64,000 nt of DNA, from the IMG/VR virus record IMGVR_UViG_3300049846_000628, positions 124,001 to 188,000 of that record. One strand, written 5' to 3'. The position numbers and the translations under genes are program-made. Each line of letters starts with the position of its first letter. Position 1 is the stretch's first letter. Shown here piece after piece: positions 5,393-41,647 of this stretch. The notes beneath the pieces are model-generated. The model worked only from the letters and a program-made list of their open reading frames with translations. It searched no databases and was not told where the DNA came from.

Positions 5393-5625
5393 AGTATTAT
5401 TAAGGTTTTTTGGATAAATTTTTTGCGAAAAAAATTTTGAATTCGTCTGTATTTTGTTTTCTATTTTAACATATAATTAGCTGCCTCTCGTAACACTTTA
5501 TAGCCTGCAGGGACCCATTGATTTTAAACACGGGGGCGGGGCACCCGACCGCACCCCCCGTAGAACTGCCGAACACGAACGCATAAGACTGCCCCCCACG
5601 AACGAACGCAGGGGGCGGGGCAGGG

Positions 5626-5802
5626 TCACCCCCACTGAATCGGTTGCACGTCGGCGGCGTGGGTCTCTGCCCACTGGGCGGCGAGCAGGGTGGCGGGGTG
5701 ACCCACGGGGTCGGTGATCCGATTGAACTTGCTGCCGTCGTTACGGTAGGCGACCCACACGGTCTGGCGGTCACGAAGGCGGGTGGCGGGGGAGAAACGC
5801 AT
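5626..5802 (-). CDS. Early small hypothetical protein (58 aa)
   Basis: Hand-translated MRFSPATRLRDRQTVW...PIQWG, own promoter at 5827-5855. Confidence 0.7.
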   Translation of the reverse strand: MRFSPATRLRDRQTVWVAYRNDGSKFNRITDPVGHPATLLAAQWAETHAADVQPIQWG

Positions 5803-5851
5803 TGGGTTCGGGTGTGAACTGAGAGAATTCTACAGGGTCAGGGGGCAGGGG

Positions 5852-6043
5852 TCAATACCCCAGCCAGACCAGAAACTCACCAGCGTCAACCCCGCCGAAG
5901 GCAGCGGTCGTTCCGTAGTCGGTGCGGAAGTCATCCCACAGACCGTGGAGTTTGGCAGCGTATGCCGCTTCGATCCAGAAGATGGTCCCGTTGTCGGGGT
6001 TGGTGATGGAGGCGATCTGACTGGGGAAGCAGGGGTCGGTCAT
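5852..6043 (-). CDS. Early small hypothetical protein
   Basis: 63-aa ORF directly behind promoter at 6066-6095. Confidence 0.75.
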   Translation of the reverse strand: MTDPCFPSQIASITNPDNGTIFWIEAAYAAKLHGLWDDFRTDYGTTAAFGGVDAGEFLVWLGY

Positions 6044-6100
6044 CGGGTGCCTTGCGGTTGAGAGAATTCTACAGGGTCAGGGGGCAGGGCGTCAACCTGC

Positions 6101-6265
6101 TCACCAGAGCAGGTCCGCGATTGACTGCAGGCGCTTGGCACGGGTTGCCAGTTCCTTAAGGATGGCCCGCTCCTCCTTGGCAGTGGGGTTGCCTTCCCAC
6201 AACCACTCCTCCAGTTGGAAGGAGGTCATGTCGTCGAAGGCGGTGGCGATGGTTCCGTCCAGCAC
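6101..6265 (-). CDS. Early small hypothetical protein (54 aa, GTG start)
   Basis: Hand-translated MLDGTIATAFDDMTSFQLEEWLW...ADLLW; GGAG RBS; own promoter. Confidence 0.65.
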   Translation of the reverse strand: MLDGTIATAFDDMTSFQLEEWLWEGNPTAKEERAILKELATRAKRLQSIADLLW

Positions 6266-6336
6266 GGTGCGCTCCGTTGGTTTGCTCTGGAATTCTACAG
6301 GGTCGGGGGCGGGAGGTCAACCCACCCCCTGGCGGA

Positions 6337-6561
6337 TCAGACCGCCACCCAGTAGGACTTGCCGTTGATCTCCTGCTGTTCTGCCATAATGTAGGAGGCA
6401 GATCCCATGCTACCGCGCCAACCCTGAACCTGGAAGTAGCACTCCTCCAGGGAGTCCTGATAGGCAAGGGTGCTGGTGATCTTACCATCCTGCACGTGCG
6501 CCACAGCGTAGGGATAGCGTTCGGGGGAGAGGATGGTCAGCAGAGGGGTGGGGGCGGTCAT
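6337..6561 (-). CDS. Early small hypothetical protein
   Basis: Start reassigned to MTAPTP at 6561 behind TGnTACAAT (6591-6599). Confidence 0.7.
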   Translation of the reverse strand: MTAPTPLLTILSPERYPYAVAHVQDGKITSTLAYQDSLEECYFQVQGWRGSMGSASYIMAEQQEINGKSYWVAV

Positions 6562-6601
6562 CGGTCGGGGGTGTCGGTTGAACTGAGAGTATTGTAGCAG
6601 G

Positions 6602-6826
6602 TCAGCGGCGCTCGGCGTTGAAGTCCTGCAGTCCCTTAAGGATGCCCTCCAGGAAGGCGGTGCCGATGCCCTCCCAGAATTTGGGGTCGCGGACCAGTTC
6701 AGCAATGGCAGCGAACCAGTCAGCAGGGGTCGCCGCGGCCAACTGTTCGCGCTCTGCAGGAGTCAGGTCTGCCATCATCTGATTCCAGTCGTTCAGCAGT
6801 TGGGTTTCCAGGTTCGGGCGGGTCAT
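6602..6826 (-). CDS. Early small hypothetical protein
   Basis: 74-aa ORF behind TGnTACAAT (6849-6857). Confidence 0.75.
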   Translation of the reverse strand: MTRPNLETQLLNDWNQMMADLTPAEREQLAAATPADWFAAIAELVRDPKFWEGIGTAFLEGILKGLQDFNAERR

Positions 6827-6872
6827 CGGGTCCGTTGCGGTTGAGAGTATTGTAGCAGATGGGGCGGACCCC

Positions 6873-7058
6873 TCAGATCATCACAGTGGTGGGCAGTGCC
6901 CGAACGATGGGGGAGTGGTGGCGGTAGCAGAACTCCCGCAGATCGTGGATGCTCTCACCAGCGAAGTCATCAGCGGTAAAGGTCCAACCGTGGAACTCAC
7001 GGTCGATCTCAGTCAGGGTGTGAGCGATCAGGGAGCGGAGGTTCTGAGCGGTAGTCAT
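6873..7058 (-). CDS. Early small hypothetical protein
   Basis: 61-aa ORF behind TATACT at 7081-7086. Confidence 0.72.
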   Translation of the reverse strand: MTTAQNLRSLIAHTLTEIDREFHGWTFTADDFAGESIHDLREFCYRHHSPIVRALPTTVMI

Positions 7059-7129
7059 CGGTTTCGTTTGAACTGAGATCAGTATAAGGGGTTGGGGTGG
7101 GGTCTCCGGAGACCCCGTGTGCCAGTGCC

Positions 7130-7318
7130 TCAGGCGTCCATCCCCATCGCATCCCGCAGGATGTTGTAGGCGTTCAGGTAGTAGTCTGCGTCAGCACCCT
7201 TACCAGCGACGCGGCAATCGACTGCCAGGCAGAGCACGGCGGTGCGGATAGTGCTCCACTGTGCCTCAGTCAGGGTGATGGAGCAGAGGTCGTTGGGGAG
7301 GACGTTGGTGCGGGTCAT
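7130..7318 (-). CDS. Early small hypothetical protein
   Basis: 62 aa; own promoter; stop inside palindrome 7118-7141. Confidence 0.75.
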   Translation of the reverse strand: MTRTNVLPNDLCSITLTEAQWSTIRTAVLCLAVDCRVAGKGADADYYLNAYNILRDAMGMDA

Positions 7319-7388
7319 CGGTCGTTTGCTTCGGTTCCCTCAGTATAGAGGCAAAAGGGAGGGGTCGTCCCCCTCCGTTGTGCCACTA

Positions 7389-7523
7389 TCAGAATTGGAT
7401 TTCTTCGGCGGTCGGCTGGGCATCGGGCATGGTATCATCCTCTGCGATCGTTTCCAGGATCTGCAGGATGCTGTCGCCGTTGCTGCCTTGGCGGAGCAGG
7501 GACATGGCAAGGTCGCGGGTCAT
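7389..7523 (-). CDS. Early small hypothetical protein (44 aa)
   Basis: Hand-translated MTRDLAMSLLRQGSNGDSILQILETIAEDD...EIQF. Confidence 0.6.
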   Translation of the reverse strand: MTRDLAMSLLRQGSNGDSILQILETIAEDDTMPDAQPTAEEIQF

Positions 7524-7581
7524 TTGAGAATCAGAGTAAAGGTTGCTGAGCAGTTTAAAGTCGTGCTCAGGACTGATAGAT

Positions 7582-7833
7582 TCAGGAGTCGAAAACGTCG
7601 CCGTTGATCTCAGCGCGGTTGATCTTAGGGTCGTCCCACTTTACACCGTCAGGGGTTTCTTTGCTGCCGCAATCATAGAATGCTTCCAGAAGTTCTTCAT
7701 AGCAGCAGATGTCATTCTCCTGAATGAAGTTGTAGATGCTTTCATCATTCTCAATCCAGAGCACCACGTTCCAGGTCTCATAATTGGTCCAACCGTTGTA
7801 GGTCTTGGTGGGAGCGGTGAGGGTGGCGGTCAT
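7582..7833 (-). CDS. Early hypothetical protein (YNGWTNYETW motif)
   Basis: YNGWTNYETWNV.LWI.NDE motif seen in many phage proteins; own promoter. Confidence 0.82.
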   Translation of the reverse strand: MTATLTAPTKTYNGWTNYETWNVVLWIENDESIYNFIQENDICCYEELLEAFYDCGSKETPDGVKWDDPKINRAEINGDVFDS

Positions 7834-7905
7834 TGGGGTTCGGTTCGGAACTTGTTTAGTATAGGGGGCGGGAGGTGCCCCCTGGTGGGTCAGTGTGCCA
7901 GTGCC

Positions 7906-8106
7906 TCAGGCGGCACAAGCGGCAGGGGTCAGGGTGACTTCTACGCTACCGTCGATCGCCAGCAGCGCCGCGTCGATGGCATCCAGGCGGGCTTCCACAA
8001 TGGAAGGCGTGAAGTGCTCAGGATGCTTCACTGCCAGACTCAGCAGCTCACCCTTCCAGGAGATCAGGGCAGTGCGGACGGTGGCGGTGGGGAGGGTCGC
8101 GGTCAT
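7906..8106 (-). CDS. Early small hypothetical protein
   Basis: 66 aa; own promoter; stop inside palindrome 7894-7917. Confidence 0.72.
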   Translation of the reverse strand: MTATLPTATVRTALISWKGELLSLAVKHPEHFTPSIVEARLDAIDAALLAIDGSVEVTLTPAACAA

Positions 8107-8139
8107 CGGGGTCGTTTGATCTGAGAGTATTCTACAGGG

Positions 8140-8310
8140 TCAGCGGGTCTGCCCGCAGTAGGAAGGGGACACTTTACAGAGTGCCTCTGCCTGCCGCTCC
8201 TGGTGCGCGTTGATGGTAGCGACTGCCTCCAGTGCCCAGGCACCTGCCACAATGCTCACCATGGCGAAGCACATAATGGCGAGAGAGTTCTGAAAGGAAC
8301 GTTCGGTCAT
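8140..8310 (-). CDS. Early small membrane protein (56 aa)
   Basis: Hand-translated MTERSFQNSLAIMCFAMVSIVAGAWALEAV..., one hydrophobic segment; own promoter. Confidence 0.6.
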   Translation of the reverse strand: MTERSFQNSLAIMCFAMVSIVAGAWALEAVATINAHQERQAEALCKVSPSYCGQTR

Positions 8311-8345
8311 CGGTTCGGTTCGGTTGATGGAATCAGTCTACAGGG

Positions 8346-8513
8346 TCAACGGGAGATGAGGTCGCCTGCAGTGTACAGTGCCTCAGCTGTCACACTGCGA
8401 ATCGGTTGCATCGGACCCCAGAACGTGTAGAGCAGGGCACCGCCGATCAGGAGTTTAATCATGGTAGCACGGTGAAACTCAGGAGAGCGGGAGCGGGTCA
8501 GGGAGCGCATCAT
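8346..8513 (-). CDS. Early small membrane protein (55 aa)
   Basis: Hand-translated MMRSLTRSRSPEFHRATMIKLLIGGALLYTFWG...; ATGA overlap with upstream ORF. Confidence 0.55.
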   Translation of the reverse strand: MMRSLTRSRSPEFHRATMIKLLIGGALLYTFWGPMQPIRSVTAEALYTAGDLISR

Positions 8514-8671
8514 CGCTGCAGTTGGGCAAGGGAGGAAGGGGCGATGTGGGAGGGGGAACCACAGGAGCGGTAGAAGTCTACCATGCGGTCTGCTTCCTCT
8601 TTAGTGGTGAACCACTGCGAGCGCCACTCACAGGCATTGTAGGGGGTCTGGTAGCGGACTTCGAAGCGCAT
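8510..8671 (-). CDS. Early small hypothetical protein (53 aa)
   Basis: Hand-translated MRFEVRYQTPYNACEWRSQWFTTKEEADRMVDFYRSCGSP...; own promoter. Confidence 0.7.
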   Translation of the reverse strand: MRFEVRYQTPYNACEWRSQWFTTKEEADRMVDFYRSCGSPSHIAPSSLAQLQR

Positions 8672-8739
8672 CGGTGTCGTTTGCTGATGGAATCAGTATA
8701 AGGGGCGGGAGGTGCCCCCAGAGAGGTTAGGTTGACGGT

Positions 8740-9495
8740 TCAGTAACTGTCACAACGGGCATTGACTGCCTCCAGAAGTTTTGCCACCTTATCTTGTTGC
8801 AGTTTGAATACAACGGAAGAGTTTTTGTTTGCTTTACTCAGTCCCAGAAATGCCTTAATTCCGTTGTTACTAGTAACGCGAATTCGCAGACCACAATCAT
8901 ACTCCTTCACGCCATCAGTGAACAACAGTCGGCGGGAACCTTTTGCGCGACCTTTGAGAAAAGGAGTGTAACCCTGTTGAATGTAACCAACTGCAGGATG
9001 TTGGTCTGCTTTGTAAGTATGAAGGTTCTTTGCTACAGTATCATTCACAGCGACCATCATTTCGCTGTTAGCATCAATCATCTGAGTTTGAATGAATGAT
9101 GCTAACTGTTCGGCAGTGAAAGAATCAAGAACACCGCTGCACAGATCATTAAAGTCTTTGCGAACTTGCTTCACAAAAGAAACAGCGGAACGCTGAGACT
9201 TGGGCAGTTGGCGGTATTCTTTGATCTGCTCAAGAAAATGGGTGAAAGTATCACCAACTACATCAGAAATCTTAGTTGTGTGAATCCAATCGAACGAACC
9301 ATTCTTTACACCTTGCTTGTGTTTGATGGTCCACTTGATGTTACGCTCAGGATCAAACGCATCCGCTTTGTTCTTCGTTCCACCTTGCAGATAAATGGAG
9401 AGAGAAGCAAGGTCAAAAAAGATTAGAAGATTCTTTGTATCTTCTTCATTCTTGACGCCTTCATAATGAACGCGCCCAGTGTTGTCAAAAGTCAT
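8740..9495 (-). CDS. Hypothetical protein, possible PD-(D/E)xK restriction-like nuclease
   Basis: 251 aa; AGGAG RBS; E...KAD...TIK spacing weakly resembles type II REase active sites. Confidence 0.45.
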   Translation of the reverse strand: MTFDNTGRVHYEGVKNEEDTKNLLIFFDLASLSIYLQGGTKNKADAFDPERNIKWTIKHKQGVKNGSFDWIHTTKISDVVGDTFTHFLEQIKEYRQLPKSQRSAVSFVKQVRKDFNDLCSGVLDSFTAEQLASFIQTQMIDANSEMMVAVNDTVAKNLHTYKADQHPAVGYIQQGYTPFLKGRAKGSRRLLFTDGVKEYDCGLRIRVTSNNGIKAFLGLSKANKNSSVVFKLQQDKVAKLLEAVNARCDSY

Positions 9496-9673
9496 TTAAT
9501 TCTCCTGTGGAATTCCACTAGATGATTTGTGCTCCGTCTTTATGGGGCGCGGAACGTTCCCCTGATGAACACAGAATAGAACGAAACAGGGGGCAGCGCA
9601 AGGGGTTGTGGACGGTTCGGGAAGTGGCACAGGATGCCCTGCTGGGGGCATCTGGGGGCTCTATACTAAGGGC

Positions 9674-9790
9674 ACAAGCGAAGGAGGGGCGGGGTAGCCC
9701 TTAAGACGAAAAAGGTCGCCACTGGGGCAGCTTTGAAATAGTAGAGTGGAAAGTATAAAAAAAGGGAGGCAATCGCCCCCCGATTCTTTA
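9674..9790 (+). ncRNA. Candidate small RNA from bidirectional palindrome promoter
   Basis: Plus-strand TATACT (9662-9667) 31 bp from palindrome 9608-9631; no credible ORF; several short stems; ends at a hairpin. Confidence 0.55.
9757..9790. terminator. Intrinsic terminator, probably bidirectional
   Basis: GGGAGGC-AATC-GCCCCCC hairpin with A7 on one side and TTCTTT on the other. Confidence 0.7.
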
Positions 9791-10135
9791 TGCGAACATA
9801 AAACCATTGCGGAACTCATACTCATTGTAGACAGGAGAAGTTCCTGCCTGTCCAACGAACTTGTGAACGAACCAATTCCAGTTCCGCTGGAATACACATT
9901 CACCACCACATCCGTGATCGTGAAGAATAGCATTCAGGCGGGACTTGGTAGTGTTAGACTGATACCCACCGTCAAAGATTTGCACGAAGTCATCACCAAC
10001 CGTGGCGATGTGATTGCCGTAAAGATACACTTTGGATTCGTTAGTTTCAGGATCGAAAGTAACTTTAGTGTTATCTTTCTGCCAGTTCTGATTGTTCAGA
10101 ATGGCGGCGTTCATTTCGCGTTCAATCTTACGCAT
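9788..10135 (-). CDS. Early hypothetical protein
   Basis: MRKIEREMNAAI...VYLYGNHIA...TTKSRLNAIL, recognisable cyanophage early-region family. Confidence 0.85.
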   Translation of the reverse strand: MRKIEREMNAAILNNQNWQKDNTKVTFDPETNESKVYLYGNHIATVGDDFVQIFDGGYQSNTTKSRLNAILHDHGCGGECVFQRNWNWFVHKFVGQAGTSPVYNEYEFRNGFMFA

Positions 10136-10209
10136 TGGGTGAATCCCTCAGGAACAAACGTAGTATGGCGTGGATTGGGGGCAATTGCAACCCCCTGTGT
10201 GCCAGTTCT

Positions 10210-11109
10210 TCAGGCGGCACACTGGAAGCGACCGCTGTTGAAGTTGTGATAGCTGAACACCTCACGATTCACCAGTTTAAACATACCAAACTCATTGGTC
10301 AGAACGTAACCCTCAGCATCAATACGATTACCGTTCACGTATGCTGCAGGACCAGAATTGCGGCACAGGAACAAACAATCATCCTTGATGCTCTTTACCA
10401 ATGCCCACAGACGAATCAGGTTAGGGTCACAATCAAACGTGTCATCCTCACTGATAGGACGACCCTCACGAATGATAGAGTTGATTTGCTGCTTAATCTT
10501 TGCCGCTTGCTTATCAGTTACGAACTCACAAGCAGTAGACATTTGACGGGCAAAGTCGCAGACTTCTTTTACATCAGCGAACGATTCTTGACCGTGCAGA
10601 ATGTAAGCTTCAGGACGAACAAACTTCACATAAGGAGTATCGGTGATAGTAAAGTTCATCGGATACGCTACAGCATCACGCAGATCATTCTCTGCAATGT
10701 AGTAAGTGTGAGGTGCAATGATGATCTCTTCAGATACTACATCACCGAACTTGTAAGTGATAGTATTGGGGGTGTATTCAGTTTCACCACCAAACCCGAT
10801 AAAATCACCTTGAATAATACCATTCACGCGAGGCAGATAATCAAAGCAAGCGTGAAGAATTTGGGCAACTTCGCCCTGATAGTGTTGATCAATCTCCTGG
10901 TGATTGTGGGCGATACGAATCTTTTTCTTGTTAAAGACTGCCTTAGTTCCTACAAAGAACTCACCGCAGGCAGGGTCGATTCCCCATACGATTGCAGGAG
11001 CTCCGTCAATCTTAACGCTGAGAGATCCAGCAGCAGTGAACCAATCAAGACACGAAAGATCACCCGTGAGGATGGTATCTTCGGGGTGCTCAAGGTGGAG
11101 GTTTTGCAT
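10210..11109 (-). CDS. DUF6267-like protein with ligase/nucleotidyltransferase motifs
   Basis: NLHLEHPED, SVKIDGAPAIVWG (KxDG), IQGDF, EGYV, KLVNR; start reassigned to MQNLHL. Confidence 0.65.
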   Translation of the reverse strand: MQNLHLEHPEDTILTGDLSCLDWFTAAGSLSVKIDGAPAIVWGIDPACGEFFVGTKAVFNKKKIRIAHNHQEIDQHYQGEVAQILHACFDYLPRVNGIIQGDFIGFGGETEYTPNTITYKFGDVVSEEIIIAPHTYYIAENDLRDAVAYPMNFTITDTPYVKFVRPEAYILHGQESFADVKEVCDFARQMSTACEFVTDKQAAKIKQQINSIIREGRPISEDDTFDCDPNLIRLWALVKSIKDDCLFLCRNSGPAAYVNGNRIDAEGYVLTNEFGMFKLVNREVFSYHNFNSGRFQCAA

Positions 11110-11178
11110 TGCGTTTGTTTTGATGCTCTTAGTATTGCACGAATCAGGGGGCAGCACAAGGGGTCTTGTGCCAGTTCT

Positions 11179-12605
11179 TCAGGTGTCCTCAGAGTGAAGA
11201 ATGTCTAGCATTTGCTGGTGATAGTTGTCAGCATCACGAACCACATTTGCTGCCTCAGATACATCTTCAATTTCATACTGTGTCATCTCCAGAGAGTGAA
11301 TCACATTGGAGAGAAGATCAGTCAGTGCCTCAATCTTTTGTGCGTCAGTCATACATTCTCATCTCCCATATCAAGAGAACAATTGCTGTAACCTTCATCG
11401 TATCCCCTGTCATAACCTTCATCATACATTGCTCGGGCAAAGTTTAAGATTTGTAGAGTATCTGCCTTCCAACAAATATCCTCCCACTTTTCAAAAGTTA
11501 GATAATTTTCAGCAAGTTGTAGGATTTGTTCTTCAGTCATCATCAAACCTCTTCACGCATTTTGAGAAGTGCTCTACGAAGTTCGCCACCTTCATAAGCA
11601 AGAAGACCTGTAGTTTCAATCATATTATACCATCCTTCATCTTGATGATACTCAATCAGGGCAATTAGAGCGTCAATTTGTGTGGTTGTCAGAGTGGTTT
11701 TTTTGTCAGTCATTTGAGTGCGTTTTGTCCGATTGTGTGCTGAACCATTCTCACTGCCATACGAAAGTTTCCAAAGTCCATAGTTTTGTCTTCTTCACAA
11801 AAATCCTCAAAAATCTTTTTGATTTGTTCGTCAGTGATTTGTGCGTTAGTCATCAGGGGTGCCTCTCAACTGAAACTAAGATAACAGGGGGTCACGGTCT
11901 CCCGCAACCCCCCGTGTGCCACTAGGTCAACTGTCACCCTCCAGCAGTTCGGGATAGTATTGATTAACCTCTTCGGTCAATTCTTCGTCCGAATACTTAT
12001 CATAACCCTCCATCAGATAATCATAACAGAGACAAGTCATAGTTTTGAGATCCATGTCATCCAGCATTTGCTGAACCATTTGATCTTGAAGGTCTTTGCG
12101 GTTCATTTCAGGAAGTGTAAAGTGCGTGATGATACTGTTGCTGAAGACGGGAAAGAATGTCAGTCCAGAACTCTACATCCTCATCGTCATTGTACTGATT
12201 GTTTTCTTCAACCAAACGAATCAGATTGTTGAGATCGTCAGCAGTGAGATAGTTCATCAGTAATCGTAGTTTGCGTTCAGGTACTCATTCACATCGAACT
12301 TCTCATCATCACGAAGTTCGGGAATGTCCATGTCAAAGATCTCACCAGGAGCATCCTGAATCTCAGACCACATCTCATCAAACATTGGTGAATCCCTCAG
12401 GAACGAATGTAATGTAGAACGGATTGGGGGGCATTGCAACCCCCCTTGTACCAGTTACTCAAGCGGCACAAGCAACGAATTCTTGAATATAATAATCCAA
12501 GGGCAATTCAAGGCGGTTAGCCTCACTTTCCCATTCTGCCCATTCTTGCTCCGAAGCATCATTAATGAAGTCTTCGAAAGTATACTCAAAAGCAGGACCG
12601 CACAT
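11179..12605 (-). other. Run of small early ORFs (e.g. 11179-11352, 11349-11546, ORF ending 11927, 12257-12385, 12459-12605)
   Basis: Tightly packed, mostly acidic ORFs with overlapping start/stop codons, punctuated by palindrome promoters. Confidence 0.7.
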
Positions 12606-12951: not shown

Positions 12952-13249
12952 GCATAATGACGATACGCAAGATCTTGATAATCATGCGCGTCTCGTGCAT
13001 AGTCCTCGTCGAGATCCTGTGTATAATACTCGTCGAGATCCGCGTAATCGTTTGTGTATGTATAGTCGAGATCGTAGTCGTCGTACATAGCTCGTCGAGA
13101 TTGTGTGACTAGATGATTATAGCATGAATCTAGACTAGATGCAAGAACTAGATTTGGGGTCTAGACTAGATTATGATAATATATATGAGTTCTCGACTAG
13201 ATTTGTGTTGATATGATAATATAATGCTATTGTGATATCTCGACTAGAT
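12855..13249 (+). repeat. Cluster of about 15 same-strand C[T/G]AGAT motifs; long form CT[C/A]G[T/A]C[G/T]AGAT
   Basis: Long copies at 13005, 13029, 13091, 13130, 13161, 13192, 13239; short copies at 12855, 12879, 12921, 12938, 13067, 13109, 13148. Confidence 0.85.
12948..13088 (-). CDS. Asp/Tyr-rich peptide (46 aa)
   Basis: Hand-translated MYDDYDLDYTYTNDYADLDEYYTQDLDEDYARDAHDYQDLAYRHYA; promoter TTGCAT-N17-TATAAT at 13144-13116. Confidence 0.6.
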   Translation of the reverse strand: MYDDYDLDYTYTNDYADLDEYYTQDLDEDYARDAHDYQDLAYRHYA

Positions 13250-13292
13250 TTTATGAGAATTGTGTGCGTCTTGTGACCTTCTGCGCGGGGGG

Positions 13293-13321
13293 TTGACTTT
13301 GAGAGCTTCGTGTGTTATAAT
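13293..13321 (+). promoter_or_regulatory. Near-consensus sigma70 promoter facing the tandem array
   Basis: TTGACT-N17-TATAAT with extended -10 TG; opposite to all neighbouring genes. Confidence 0.85.
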
Positions 13322-13348
13322 GCGCTCGCTAAGCTTGCATAAGGATCA

Positions 13349-13524
13349 GACATTTATAAGGTTTTAATGGGGTCTTTATAAGGTCTTTATAAGGTCTTTA
13401 TAAGGTCTTTATAAGGTCTTTATAAGGTCTTTATAAGGTCTTTATAAGGTCTTTATAAGGTCTTTATAAGGTTTTAATGGGGTTTTTATAAGGTTTTAAT
13501 GGGGTTTTAATGAGGTATTAAACA
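13349..13524. repeat. 11-bp tandem array
   Basis: Nine perfect GGTCTTTATAA (13371-13469) flanked in phase by GGTTTTAATGG-type variants. Confidence 0.98.
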
Positions 13525-13626
13525 GATAATATAAGCATATAACACTAACATTATACAACCGAATAAAAAACAATAATATATTTTTTAATATATTTTTTAA
13601 TTGATTTTAACCTTTTTTATTGATTT

Positions 13627-13797
13627 TTATGCCTTTTGGAGGTTAGAAAGTTCGTGTTCTGCTCTTCTTTCTAACTCTCCGTGTACGTGTCTACGTTGTT
13701 GACGACTCGCAATCGCATTCTGTCTAGCACGGAACATTGAGAGTGAAGTTTGTGGAGCAGAAGGAATCTGTTCCATAAATTGTTGAAACGTTTTCAT
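13627..13797 (-). CDS. Small late protein with MKTFQQF N-terminus
   Basis: Hand-translated 56 aa; ATAAATA late promoter near 13824-13830; N-terminus resembles T4-like internal head protein signals. Confidence 0.65.
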   Translation of the reverse strand: MKTFQQFMEQIPSAPQTSLSMFRARQNAIASRQQRRHVHGELERRAEHELSNLQKA

Positions 13798-16443: not shown

Positions 16444-16920
16444 TTATACTGCCTGCGTCAAGCGGTTGGGGAAGAATTGTACCACTTCTGGAACTGGTAC
16501 ATTCAGTTCGTCAAACAAATACTCAACATATAAGGTTTCTTCCTGTTCCCGTGCTTCAATTTCGTGTGGTTGCATCCAATAGTCCATATCTTCCACACAT
16601 TCTTTACCATAACACATTTTTCCACGTCGGAGTCGCAGCGAACCGACCACCCACTGTCGCAGGTGCGTCAGTTCGTGCAAAAGAGTTTTTATATACAACT
16701 CATCATCCATATAGGTATTCAATTCAATCAGAAAGTGACGGGGACGATAGGTTTCACCTACAACGTCACAATATCCATAAACCTGCTCACGATTCAAACC
16801 ACGATGCACAATATCAACTTGAATCTTATGCCGTGGAAAGAAACGATTCAGAAACCAAGCGGTAACATCCTCACAGACCCGCTTGCGATAACCATATCCA
16901 GTGTGCGTAATGTAAGACAT
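16444..16920 (-). CDS. Zincin-like metallopeptidase
   Basis: TLLHELTHLRQW (HExxH) and downstream PHEIEA. Confidence 0.75.
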   Translation of the reverse strand: MSYITHTGYGYRKRVCEDVTAWFLNRFFPRHKIQVDIVHRGLNREQVYGYCDVVGETYRPRHFLIELNTYMDDELYIKTLLHELTHLRQWVVGSLRLRRGKMCYGKECVEDMDYWMQPHEIEAREQEETLYVEYLFDELNVPVPEVVQFFPNRLTQAV

Positions 16921-41324: not shown

Positions 41325-41357
41325 AGGGATTTTCCCATATCTCTTATTTATTTTAAG

Positions 41358-41439
41358 TAGGGCGAGCGGGACTTGAACCCGCAAGGCTTGCGCCACCGGT
41401 TTTTAAGACCGGAATGTTTACCGATTTCATCACCGCCCC
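41358..41439 (-). tRNA. tRNA-Leu(TAA)
   Basis: GGGGCGG/TCGCCCT acceptor, CCGGT-CTTAAAA-ACCGG anticodon arm, long V arm, GCGGG-TTCAAGT-CCCGC. Confidence 0.95.
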
Positions 41440-41452
41440 GTGATGTGAGACC

Positions 41453-41481
41453 ATTATAACTCTTTGAGTCTGAATGGTCAA
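41453..41481 (-). promoter_or_regulatory. Sigma70 promoter for tRNA-Leu
   Basis: TTGACC-N17-TATAAT. Confidence 0.8.
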
Positions 41482-41482
41482 G

Positions 41483-41555
41483 TGCTCCTTGCGTGGATCG
41501 AACACGCCTCAGGCGAATTATGAGTTCGCTGCATTCACCAGATTGCTAAAGGAGC
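41483..41555 (-). tRNA. tRNA with CAT anticodon (elongator Met or Ile2)
   Basis: GCTCCTT/AAGGAGC acceptor, GCGAA-CTCATAA-TTCGC, GCGTG-TTCGATC-CACGC. Confidence 0.93.
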
Positions 41556-41559
41556 AAGG

Positions 41560-41647
41560 TACGAGTGCCTGGATTCGAACCAGGTCAAAGCCGCTAATCT
41601 GGCGGAAAGAGTTTATAAGACTCCTCTGACTACCAAGTCTCACTCGC
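41560..41647 (-). tRNA. Non-canonical tRNA-Ile(TAT) with long variable arm
   Basis: GCGAGTG/CACTCGT acceptor, GGAGT-CTTATAA-ACTCT, CCGC/GCGG V arm, CCTGG-TTCGAAT-CCAGG. Confidence 0.85.

What the first reader, a model, noticed from the sequence alone, without database searches (positions are those of the whole stretch)
9608..9790. Bidirectional palindrome drives a candidate small RNA against the gene flow
Seen: this site has a -10 box on each side at the standard distance (TATTCT minus, 9573-9578; TATACT plus, 9662-9667). The plus transcript (about 9674-9790) has no credible ORF, contains AAGGAGG, stems AGGGGC/GCCCUU, GAC/GUC and CCACU/AGUGG, and meets a terminator. Its GGGGCGGG core also occurs on the plus strand near 5533, 5612, 6307, 7865 and 8702, so it is complementary to minus-strand early read-through RNA there. 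Inference: an undescribed phage sRNA, possibly shutting down earlier cassettes or sponging a host factor.
Basis: partly seen in the sequence, partly recalled or inferred. Interest (0 to 1): 0.72.

Follow-up and report, generated by a model that had tools for sequence, protein, structure and literature searches.

The report
Conserved small-RNA-like module in freshwater cyanophages
The flagged gap in this T4-like cyanophage holds two back-to-back early promoters, and one of them points against the genes at a ~115-base non-coding unit that is almost unchanged in more than 200 environmental phage contigs; this looks like an undescribed phage small-RNA gene, but no transcript has been seen yet.

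Summary
The interval lies in a 292-bp gap between two minus-strand genes of a 211-kb T4-like cyanophage (Kyanoviridae).

**What is there**
- Two divergent early-type promoters share a palindromic upstream element.
- The plus-strand promoter faces a ~50-nt near-invariant core, an AT-rich spacer and the terminator of the upstream gene.

**Comparative support**
- The core occurs in 93 IMG/VR contigs, more than 120 JGI metagenome contigs and phage DSL-LC03. It was not found in any cellular genome, in two marine isolates or in Rfam.
- In 126 of 126 distinct loci the plus-strand -10 box keeps the form TAnnnT, with nine different hexamers.
- A 5-bp hairpin shows compensatory changes at 3 of 5 pairs, and its closing G·U pair fits only the plus strand.
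- A hairpin terminator ends about 111 nt downstream.

**Against**
- Four metatranscriptomes cover both flanking genes but leave 9553-9791 empty.
- The GGGGCGGG "targets" are paralogous promoter stem-loops, not evident targets.

**Verdict**
This is probably a new phage small-RNA family of unknown function. The rivals are an origin-linked transcript and a DNA-level regulatory cassette.

The parts
9573..9601 (-). Early promoter of the 251-aa gene: -35 TTGCGC (9601-9596), 17-nt spacer, -10 TATTCT (9578-9573).
   Evidence: Read directly. It is 85% identical over 34 nt to the promoter at 11131-11164. RNA contigs of the 251-aa gene stop at 9548, 9552 and 9552 in three runs, just downstream of the expected start site.
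9607..9631 (.). Shared palindromic upstream promoter element. It reads CGGTT-N4-AAGTGGCACA on the plus strand (9613-9631) and CACTT-N4-AACCGTCCACA on the minus strand (9626-9607).
   Evidence: About 14 minus-strand promoters of this genome carry the same element about 30 nt upstream of their -10 box. In many relatives the two half-sites form a near-perfect palindrome. A half-site is present in 104 of 126 loci.
9633..9652 (+). G+C-rich stem-loop inside the plus promoter: GATGCCC, a 6-nt loop, then GGGCATC.
   Evidence: Read directly. Other early promoters of this genome carry comparable stem-loops between the upstream element and the -10 box.
9639..9667 (+). Plus-strand early-type promoter: -35 CTGCTG (9639-9644), 17-nt spacer, -10 TATACT (9662-9667). 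The predicted start site is near A9674.
   Evidence: The -10 box is TAnnnT in 126 of 126 distinct loci, with 9 different hexamers. TTGnnn lies 15-18 nt upstream in 53 of 126. The T, A and T positions are invariant in the 121-sequence alignment.
9673..9722 (+). Near-invariant core of the predicted RNA. It includes the Shine-Dalgarno-like AAGGAGG (9681-9687).
   Evidence: Found in 93 IMG/VR contigs, more than 120 JGI metagenome contigs and DSL-LC03. The 121-sequence alignment has 84% mean column identity. Not found in any cellular genome.
9686..9701 (+). Hairpin P2: GGGGC (9686-9690), loop GGGGUA, GCCCU (9697-9701).
   Evidence: 99.7% of cells are paired, and 3 of 5 pairs show double compensatory changes. 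The closing pair is G·U in 118 of 121 sequences, which would be A·C on the minus strand.
9723..9763 (+). Variable, AT-rich spacer between the core and the terminator.
   Evidence: Poorly conserved and variable in length. In some relatives it is expanded to 100-250 nt and carries ACTAGAT repeats.
9757..9790 (.). Bidirectional hairpin terminator. The stem is 9764-9781, with U7 on the minus strand (9763-9757) and GAUUCUUUA on the plus strand (9782-9790).
   Evidence: The scan reports it on the minus strand. The RNA contig of the Gp96-like gene stops at 9792 in one run. In relatives, 51 of 89 such hairpins have at least 5 T in the 9 nt that follow on the plus strand.
13108..13255 (.). Block of ACTAGAT(T) repeats, 3.4 kb further along the direction of the plus transcript. 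Its link to the element is positional only.
   Evidence: The repeats cluster on this side of the element in 28 of 52 loci and on the other side in 0 of 60. In L083, L202, L242, L104, L176, L179 and L190 they lie directly between the core and the terminator.

Best explanation
The gap at 9496-9787 is a compact regulatory module of a freshwater or estuarine lineage of T4-like cyanophages.

**Layout.** Two early-type promoters stand back to back on one palindromic upstream element. The leftward promoter makes the mRNA of the 251-aa gene. The rightward promoter points against the gene flow. It would start near 9674 and end at the hairpin that also terminates the upstream Gp96-like gene, giving a non-coding RNA of about 115 nt.

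**The predicted RNA.** It has a nearly invariant 5' half: an unpaired purine-rich, Shine-Dalgarno-like stretch, a 5-bp hairpin with a G-rich loop, and a conserved 3' flank. An AT-rich spacer of variable length follows.

**Most likely function.** I take it to be an immediate-early, trans-acting small RNA made by the host RNA polymerase. It would act through its invariant 5' half, either by pairing with a conserved partner RNA or by binding a conserved protein.

**Shown and inferred.**
- Shown: the sequence anatomy, the conservation, the covariation of the hairpin, and the ends of the flanking mRNAs.
- Inferred: that the plus promoter fires, that the RNA is stable, and what it acts on.
For: - **Promoter.** The -10 box is TAnnnT in 126 of 126 loci with 9 hexamer variants. 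TTGnnn is at the right spacing in 53 of 126. The upstream half-site is present in 104 of 126. About 14 gene-flow promoters of the same genome have the same layout.
- **Core.** It is present in 93 viral contigs, more than 120 metagenome contigs and DSL-LC03. It is nearly invariant, while flanking coding DNA is only about 70-80% identical.
- **Hairpin.** P2 has compensatory changes at three pairs and a G·U pair specific to the plus strand. No shuffle reached its score, and slid controls collapse.
- **Terminator.** A hairpin ends at a median of 111 nt from the core start, and 57% have a T-rich tail on the plus strand. A diverged second copy in another genome has its own 13-bp hairpin at a similar distance.
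- **Independence from neighbours.** The module sits between many different genes: at least 13 upstream and more than 20 downstream families.
- **Not coding, not a known family.** No conserved ORF and no Rfam family.
Against: - Contigs of four metatranscriptomes cover both flanking genes at depths of 4-66 but nothing from 9553 to 9791. No contig from a relative lands on the conserved core either. This is weak evidence: contigs show presence rather than absence, and many RNA preparations lose RNAs under 200 nt (my own knowledge).
- A search for RNA runs with the 201-nt element alone listed none.
- Only one short hairpin is supported. The other proposed stems are not. The single-sequence fold is no better than shuffles (z = -1.1).
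- The -35 box in this window is weak (CTGCTG).
- In some relatives 100-250 nt of repeat-bearing AT-rich DNA lies inside the would-be RNA gene, which is unusual for a small RNA.
- No target or partner was identified.
Confidence: 0.5

Rival explanations
1. Origin-linked transcript. The rightward promoter makes a G-rich, structured RNA that activates or primes DNA replication, by an R-loop or by transcriptional activation, in the AT-rich and repeat-bearing DNA downstream. This would resemble the promoter-plus-unwinding-element origins of T4 or ColE1 RNA II.
For: - The promoter is conserved but no stable transcript was seen.
- The transcript start is G-rich (GGAGGGGCGGGG) and an AT-rich stretch follows.
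- In DSL-LC03, L176, L179, L190, L083, L202 and L242 the core is followed directly by 100-250 nt of AT-rich DNA with 2-4 ACTAGAT repeats before the terminator.
- The repeat block always lies on the side the transcript points to: 28 of 52 loci against 0 of 60.
- There are one or two copies per genome.
Against: - In most loci, this window included, a terminator follows after only about 40 nt and the repeat block is kilobases away. The core is just as conserved there, so its role does not depend on adjacency.
- In this genome the repeat block has its own strong plus-strand promoter, an 11-bp tandem array and a 22% G+C stretch. That region is the better origin candidate.
- Nothing here measures replication.
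Confidence: 0.15
2. DNA-level cassette. The module is a promoter-terminator cassette of the PeSL type. Its conserved core is a protein-binding or recombination site, and the rightward promoter is a by-product of the palindromic upstream element with no functional RNA product.
For: - The genome carries a family of early promoters with embedded G+C stem-loops in front of small ORFs.
- The module moves between many gene contexts.
- No RNA was seen.
- The upstream element is a palindrome, so a mirror-image promoter could arise for free.
Against: - A by-product would not keep TAnnnT in 126 of 126 loci through nine hexamer variants.
- It would not keep a G·U pair that is A·C on the other strand in 118 of 121 sequences, nor compensatory pairs.
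- It would not keep a T-rich tail on the plus side of the terminator.
- The other roughly 14 promoters of the family have no such core next to them: the model finds a single copy in the genome.
Confidence: 0.15
3. Cis-acting antisense or insulator. The rightward transcription collides with, or reads into, the 3' end of the upstream gene to tune or shut down early expression.
For: - The promoter faces the upstream gene.
- The terminator is weaker in the plus direction in this window, with an A·C mismatch and a poor tail.
- An antisense RNA, CfrI, is known in the T4-like cyanophage S-PM2 (PMC2984593).
Against: - The upstream gene differs among loci: at least 13 families.
- Up to the terminator the transcript overlaps only the stop codon.
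- No RNA contig joins the element to the Gp96-like gene in four runs.
- A 50-nt invariant core with a covarying hairpin is not needed for interference.
Confidence: 0.07
4. A small protein is encoded in the interval, on either strand.
For: AAGGAGG is a perfect Shine-Dalgarno sequence. In some relatives an ATG 15 nt further on opens a 12-codon frame.
Against: - That ATG is absent in the window (it reads AAG) and in many relatives.
- The spacing is too long.
- The variable columns show no three-base rhythm.
- The ORFs listed in the window start upstream of the predicted start site or run antisense through the Gp96-like gene.
Confidence: 0.02

Closest known systems
PeSL cassettes (promoter-early stem-loop) of T4-type phages (Arbiol et al. 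2010, PMC2839356; Comeau et al. 2014, PMC4122927)
   Same: - Repeated sigma-70-like early promoters carry a G/C-rich stem-loop within or next to them.
- They sit in the variable early region in front of small ORFs.
- The gene content next to the cassettes differs between relatives.
   Different: - PeSLs are unidirectional and carry no conserved transcribed core.
- Here one cassette is doubled into a divergent pair, and the extra promoter faces a 50-nt invariant segment with a covarying hairpin.
- These promoters also carry a palindromic upstream element that the PeSL papers do not describe.
- Mini-circle formation was not tested.
CfrI antisense RNA of cyanophage S-PM2 (Millard et al. 2010, as summarised in PMC2984593)
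   Same: It is a non-coding RNA of a T4-like cyanophage transcribed against neighbouring genes. It is the only experimentally shown case cited in that review.
   Different: - CfrI is about 225 nt and overlaps psbA and a homing-endonuclease gene.
- The unit here is intergenic, about 115 nt, overlaps no gene up to its terminator, and shares no sequence with any marine isolate checked.
Rfam motifs reported in cyanophages: wcaG, manA, glnA, PhotoRC-II, abiF (listed in PMC9964418)
   Same: They are conserved structured non-coding elements in cyanomyovirus genomes, found by comparative genomics.
   Different: None matches. Nothing in the window reaches a gathering score except two tRNAs, and the best permissive hits on the interval have E = 2.4 and 6. 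Most of those motifs are cis-regulatory leaders of genes; this one has its own promoter and terminator.
T4 replication origins ori(uvsY) and ori(34): a promoter plus a downstream DNA-unwinding element, with an R-loop primer (my own knowledge, not checked in a paper here)
   Same: A host-polymerase promoter is followed by an AT-rich stretch. In compact relatives, direct repeats lie downstream.
   Different: - The T4 origins use MotA-dependent middle promoters and have no conserved structured RNA segment.
- Here a terminator usually follows within about 110 nt.
- Origin activity is untested.
Lambda pR'-tR' '6S' transcript and HK022 put RNA (my own knowledge)
   Same: A promoter is followed by a short, conserved, structured initial transcript and a terminator about 100-200 nt away.
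   Different: Those systems exist to read through into co-oriented late genes. Here everything beyond the terminator is on the other strand, so there is nothing for anti-termination to express.

Membership tests
Known Rfam RNA families (including cyanophage motifs) | A covariance-model score at or above the family's gathering threshold | tested here: not met
   At gathering thresholds the whole window gives only two tRNA matches. A permissive scan of 9480-9830 gives FopS at 17.7 bits against 56 and Hammerhead_1 at 12.8 against 34.
Bacterial or phage trans-acting small RNA (general class) | Its own promoter | tested here: met
   By sequence and comparison only: TAnnnT in 126 of 126 loci and the layout of the early-promoter family. 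Promoter activity was not measured.
Bacterial or phage trans-acting small RNA (general class) | An intrinsic terminator that defines a short transcript | tested here: met
   Hairpin at 9764-9781 with the tail GAUUCUUUA. In relatives the hairpin ends at a median of 111 nt, and 51 of 89 have at least 5 T in the next 9 nt. It is weaker on the plus strand in this window.
Bacterial or phage trans-acting small RNA (general class) | A discrete transcript detected | tested here: inconclusive
   No contig on 9553-9791 in four metatranscriptomes that cover both flanks. No RNA run was listed for the element alone. Contigs cannot show absence, and small RNAs are often lost.
Bacterial or phage trans-acting small RNA (general class) | Conserved structure with covariation | tested here: met
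   For one hairpin only, P2: 3 of 5 pairs with double changes and 99.7% paired. The other stems are not supported.
Bacterial or phage trans-acting small RNA (general class) | An identified target or partner | not tested
PeSL regulatory cassette | A sigma-70-like early promoter joined to a stable stem-loop, repeated in the variable region in front of small ORFs | tested here: met
   About 14 promoters have the shared layout and G/C stem-loops. The definition is taken from PMC2839356.
PeSL regulatory cassette | Recombination between cassettes (module shuffling, mini-circles) | tested here: inconclusive
   Gene order around the module differs between relatives, which fits shuffling. No junction or circle was observed. 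The loose end is only the paralogous promoter at 12427.
T4-type R-loop replication origin | A promoter followed by a DNA-unwinding element | tested here: inconclusive
   About 40 nt of AT-rich DNA follows in the window, partly the A-run of the terminator. The stretch is long, AT-rich and repeat-bearing only in some relatives.
T4-type R-loop replication origin | A persistent RNA-DNA hybrid and origin activity | not testable with these tools
   This needs replication assays or hybrid mapping.
Cis-antisense RNA (CfrI-like) | The transcript overlaps a gene on the other strand | tested here: not met
   Up to its terminator the unit ends at 9790 and touches only the stop codon of the gene at 9788-10135. 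No contig bridges the two.
Lambda 6S / anti-termination leader | Co-oriented genes beyond the terminator that read-through would express | tested here: not met
   The credible genes beyond 9790 are on the minus strand. The genome is transcribed almost entirely on that strand.

The most novel reading that the evidence does not exclude
The element could be the RNA half of a two-part replication or early-control region of freshwater cyanomyoviruses. An immediate-early, G-rich, hairpin-bearing transcript would be aimed at a block of ACTAGAT repeats and AT-rich DNA. The two parts are fused in compact genomes. In others, including this one, inserted early genes separate them by up to 5.6 kb. If so, this would be the first sequence-defined origin or activator RNA of T4-like cyanophages. 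It would also explain why variable genes collect exactly between the two parts.
Probability: 0.15. Interest if true: 0.8.

Novelty: new member of a known kind. Interest (0 to 1): 0.62.

Why it matters
- **Few comparable RNAs are known.** The only experimentally shown non-coding RNA of a T4-like cyanophage that I found cited is the antisense RNA CfrI. The other reported cyanophage RNA elements are Rfam-predicted motifs.
- **The conservation is unusual.** The core is held almost letter for letter across hundreds of freshwater, riverine and estuarine phage contigs, while the genes around it drift and are swapped. That implies strong selection on a function used early in infection.
- **It is testable.** There is a 115-nt unit with a defined promoter, hairpin and terminator.
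- **By-products of the analysis.**
  - It exposes this lineage's early-promoter layout: a palindromic upstream element, then -35, a stem-loop and -10.
  - It points to a nearby repeat-rich, AT-rich region that may be the replication origin. For T4-like cyanophages the review I read reports only a predicted origin, in Syn9.
- **Main limit.** No cultured phage carries the element: DSL-LC03 is itself a metagenome assembly.

Tried and rejected
- **Known RNA families.** Rfam gave nothing at gathering or permissive thresholds.
- **Host origin or mimicry.** The 17-mer core pattern hit 70 cellular contigs, none cyanobacterial. None extends beyond the pattern (at most 14 of 33 further bases match), so all are chance.
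- **Marine isolates.** blastn of the interval against 50,697 phage records found only DSL-LC03. The covariance model found nothing in S-M1 or S-H9-1 (E at least 0.37). The gaps after their Gp96-like genes are 5 and 37 nt.
- **Other stems.**
  - GCGA/UCGC is almost invariant, and it is broken in the diverged copies L104 (DSL-LC03), L181 and L320.
  - The third pair of GAC/GUC is unpaired in 24 of 121 sequences, with no strand preference.
  - CCACU/AGUGG is not conserved.
  - Mutual information outside P2 mostly tracks lineage blocks.
- **Alternative pairings.** The variable patch after the core is a C-run or a G-run and can pair with one strand or the other of P2. Many variants have neither run, so I did not build on this.
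- **Single-sequence folds.** Neither strand folds significantly better than shuffles.
- **Small ORF.** Rejected.
- **Lambda-6S-type leader.** Rejected for lack of co-oriented genes.
- **CRISPR-repeat mimic (RNA anti-CRISPR).** I considered this because of the hairpin followed by ...GACGAAAAC. The last bases vary (A or C), no arrays carry the motif, and no host repeats could be checked.
- **RNA evidence.** The second run search with the short element listed none. A 927-nt Logan contig ends exactly at 9662. Its run type is unknown, and the end coincides with the boundary between conserved and variable sequence, so it is more likely an assembly break than a transcript end.
- **GC skew.** It is uninformative because nearly all genes are on one strand.
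- **Doron et al. 2016.** This paper on Syn9 promoters is not held in the library.

Full report
**Where the finding lies.**
- The window is bases 124001-188000 of a 211,201-bp IMG/VR virus record, assembled from JGI sample 3300043395.
- It is a T4-like cyanophage. The neighbouring proteins match the Pfam families Kyano_Gp96 and DUF6267. The nearest GenBank phages are Synechococcus myoviruses, about 70% identical in coding parts only.
- Almost all genes are on the minus strand.
- The finding lies in a 292-bp gap (9496-9787) between the gene for a 251-aa protein with no known family (8740-9495) and the Gp96-like gene (9788-10135), both on the minus strand.

**Checking the observation.**
- Three points need correction.
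  - The terminator at 9764-9781 is above all the minus-strand terminator of the Gp96-like gene, with seven pairs followed by U7. On the plus strand it has a mismatch and a weaker tail.
  - Only one of the three stems holds up (see the hairpin section below).
  - The GGGGCGGG copies are not independent. Five lie in a 59% G+C, G-skewed island. A local model still makes them unexpected (0.44 expected, P about 0.0007).
- Three of those five copies are the same promoter spacer, GGGGCGGGAGGT(G/C). [quoted passage not shown] The other two lie in a terminator-like G/C hairpin at the edge of the island. All are upstream of the local start sites, so only read-through RNA would carry them.

**The promoters.**
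- This genome has a family of about 14 minus-strand promoters. Their layout is CAGTT-N4-AACTGG(C/T)ACA, about 8 nt, TTGnnn, 16-17 nt, TAnnnT, often with a G/C stem-loop in between.
- The minus-strand promoter of the 251-aa gene belongs to this family: TTGCGC, 17 nt, TATTCT. It is 85% identical over 34 nt to the promoter at 11131-11164.
- The two upstream elements overlap as a palindrome (9607-9631). In many relatives it is near-perfect.
- This layout resembles the PeSL cassettes of other T4-type phages, here doubled into a divergent pair.

**RNA data.**
- Contigs of four freshwater and riverine metatranscriptomes were laid on 9300-10199.
- Contigs of the 251-aa gene stop at 9548, 9552 and 9552, a few bases downstream of where the minus promoter should start.
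- Contigs of the Gp96-like gene stop at 9792 to 9914, at or before the terminator.
- This supports the leftward promoter and the terminator. It also shows that the libraries are RNA rather than contaminating DNA.
- Nothing covers 9553-9791 in any run, not even a contig from a related phage on the conserved core.
- So there is no evidence of an abundant plus-strand RNA. The test is weak, because contigs do not show absence and RNAs near 110 nt are often lost in preparation (my own knowledge).

**Relatives.**
- It was not found in any cellular genome. The 70 hits there are chance matches.
- It is absent from the marine isolates S-M1 and S-H9-1.
- The window's genome has one copy (96 bits). Some genomes have two.
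- The neighbours change. Upstream is Gp96-like in 30 of 63 loci, DUF6267 in 9, and eleven other families. Downstream is DUF6267 in 23 of 64 and more than twenty other families. In close relatives of the 251-aa gene the module sits in front of DUF6267 instead.

**What is conserved.**
- Among 126 distinct loci with flanks, the plus-strand -10 box is always TAnnnT, through nine different hexamers.
- TTGnnn stands 15-18 nt upstream in 53 loci (I estimate about 6% by chance).
- The upstream half-site is present in 104 loci.
- An A-run plus G/C hairpin ends at a median of 111 nt after the core start (range 99-268).
- 51 of 89 such hairpins are followed on the plus strand by at least 5 T in 9 nt.
- From the predicted start, about 50 bases are nearly invariant. 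The following patch and spacer vary.

**The hairpin.**
- GGGGC/GCCCU (9686-9690 with 9697-9701) is paired in 99.7% of cells.
- It shows double compensatory changes at three of five pairs: G-C to A-U in the DSL-LC03 group, G-C to C-G in L014, and C-G to A-U in the L037 group and in the second copy of G001.
- Its closing pair is G·U in 118 of 121 sequences, which would be A·C on the other strand.
- This points to a structure read on the plus strand.
- No other stem is supported.

**Interpretation.**
- The simplest reading is a small non-coding transcription unit of about 115 nt, fired by an early promoter against the gene flow and selected for its 5' half. That would be a new phage small-RNA family.
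- I give this 0.5, because expression is not shown and no partner is known.
- The Shine-Dalgarno-like AAGGAGG partly overlaps the hairpin, and its meaning is open.

**A lead beyond the coordinates.**
- In several relatives the stretch between the core and the terminator is expanded to 100-250 nt of AT-rich DNA with ACTAGAT repeats.
- In this window the same repeats, seven copies, lie at 13108-13255. Next to them are a strong plus-strand promoter (13293-13321), an 11-bp tandem array (13353-13521) and a 22% G+C stretch.
- Across loci the repeats cluster only on the side the plus transcript points to: 0.50 against 0.03 per kb, and 28 of 52 loci against 0 of 60, at 73 nt to 5.6 kb.
- The element and the repeat block are therefore two fixed landmarks with a variable set of early genes between them.
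- This keeps alive an origin-linked role for the transcript (0.15). Against it, the core is equally conserved where a terminator and kilobases of genes separate the two.
- A purely DNA-level cassette (0.15) fits the missing RNA, but not the TAnnnT pattern or the strand-specific G·U pair.

**Novelty.** No Rfam family, nor the paper that describes DSL-LC03, mentions the element. It is best filed as a new member of a known kind: a phage-encoded small non-coding RNA candidate, embedded in a PeSL-like divergent promoter cassette.

Noticed in passing
window 13100-13640: A non-coding region of about 540 bp holds seven ACTAGAT(T) repeats (13108-13255), a strong plus-strand promoter TTGACT-17-TATAAT with TG (13293-13321), an 11-bp tandem repeat TTTATAAGGTC in 13-15 copies (13353-13521), and a 22% G+C stretch. 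It looks like a replication origin or a control hub.
   Followed up: partly
window 5400-8800: A 59-60% G+C island sits in a genome of 37.7% G+C. It is G-skewed on the plus strand and packed with very small minus-strand ORFs, several behind their own early promoter with a G/C stem-loop. It may have been acquired from, or adapted to, a high-G+C host.
   Followed up: partly
window 7124-28853 (for example 7124, 7385, 7900, 10204, 11173, 11921, 12453, 12681, 16484, 18819, 28853): An early-promoter family carries a palindromic upstream element, CAGTT-N4-AACTGG(C/T)ACA, about 30 nt before the -10 box. This suggests a binding site for a dimeric factor. I did not find it described in the papers I could read.
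   Followed up: partly
window 16484-16495: A second site has upstream-element half-sites on both strands (TGTACCAGTTCCAGAAGTGGTACA). I saw no clear plus-strand -10 box or conserved core next to it.
   Followed up: no
L320 1430-1620 (G001, IMGVR_UViG_3300044629_000431); L014 and L181 (IMGVR_UViG_3300044949_001148); L236 and L288: Some genomes carry two diverged copies of the element, 1-3 kb apart in the cases measured (G001, L236/L288). The G001 copy has its own perfect 13-bp hairpin terminator. In L181 the element points the same way as the next gene and has no terminator in between.
   Followed up: partly
window 10136-10209 and 12400-12460: Two paralogous promoter cassettes (TCAGGAAC...GGGGGCAATTGCAACCCCC) flank the DUF6267 gene and a run of small genes. 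Such direct repeats could delete or move that block, as described for PeSLs.
   Followed up: no
window 10210-11157 (minus): The DUF6267 protein contains SVKIDGAPA, which looks like the KxDG motif of nucleotidyl-transferase ligases. This is my reading by eye and was not tested. This gene is the commonest neighbour divergent from the element (23 of 64 loci).
   Followed up: no
window 41357-41647 (minus): A cluster of three tRNA genes (Leu-TAA, Met-CAT, Ile-TAT). ARAGORN finds all three; Rfam finds two.
   Followed up: no
L327 (Logan contig of SRR35181285), window 10588-9662: A 927-nt contig ends exactly at the first base of the plus-strand -10 box. This is probably an assembly break at the boundary between conserved and variable sequence. 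The run type is unknown.
   Followed up: partly
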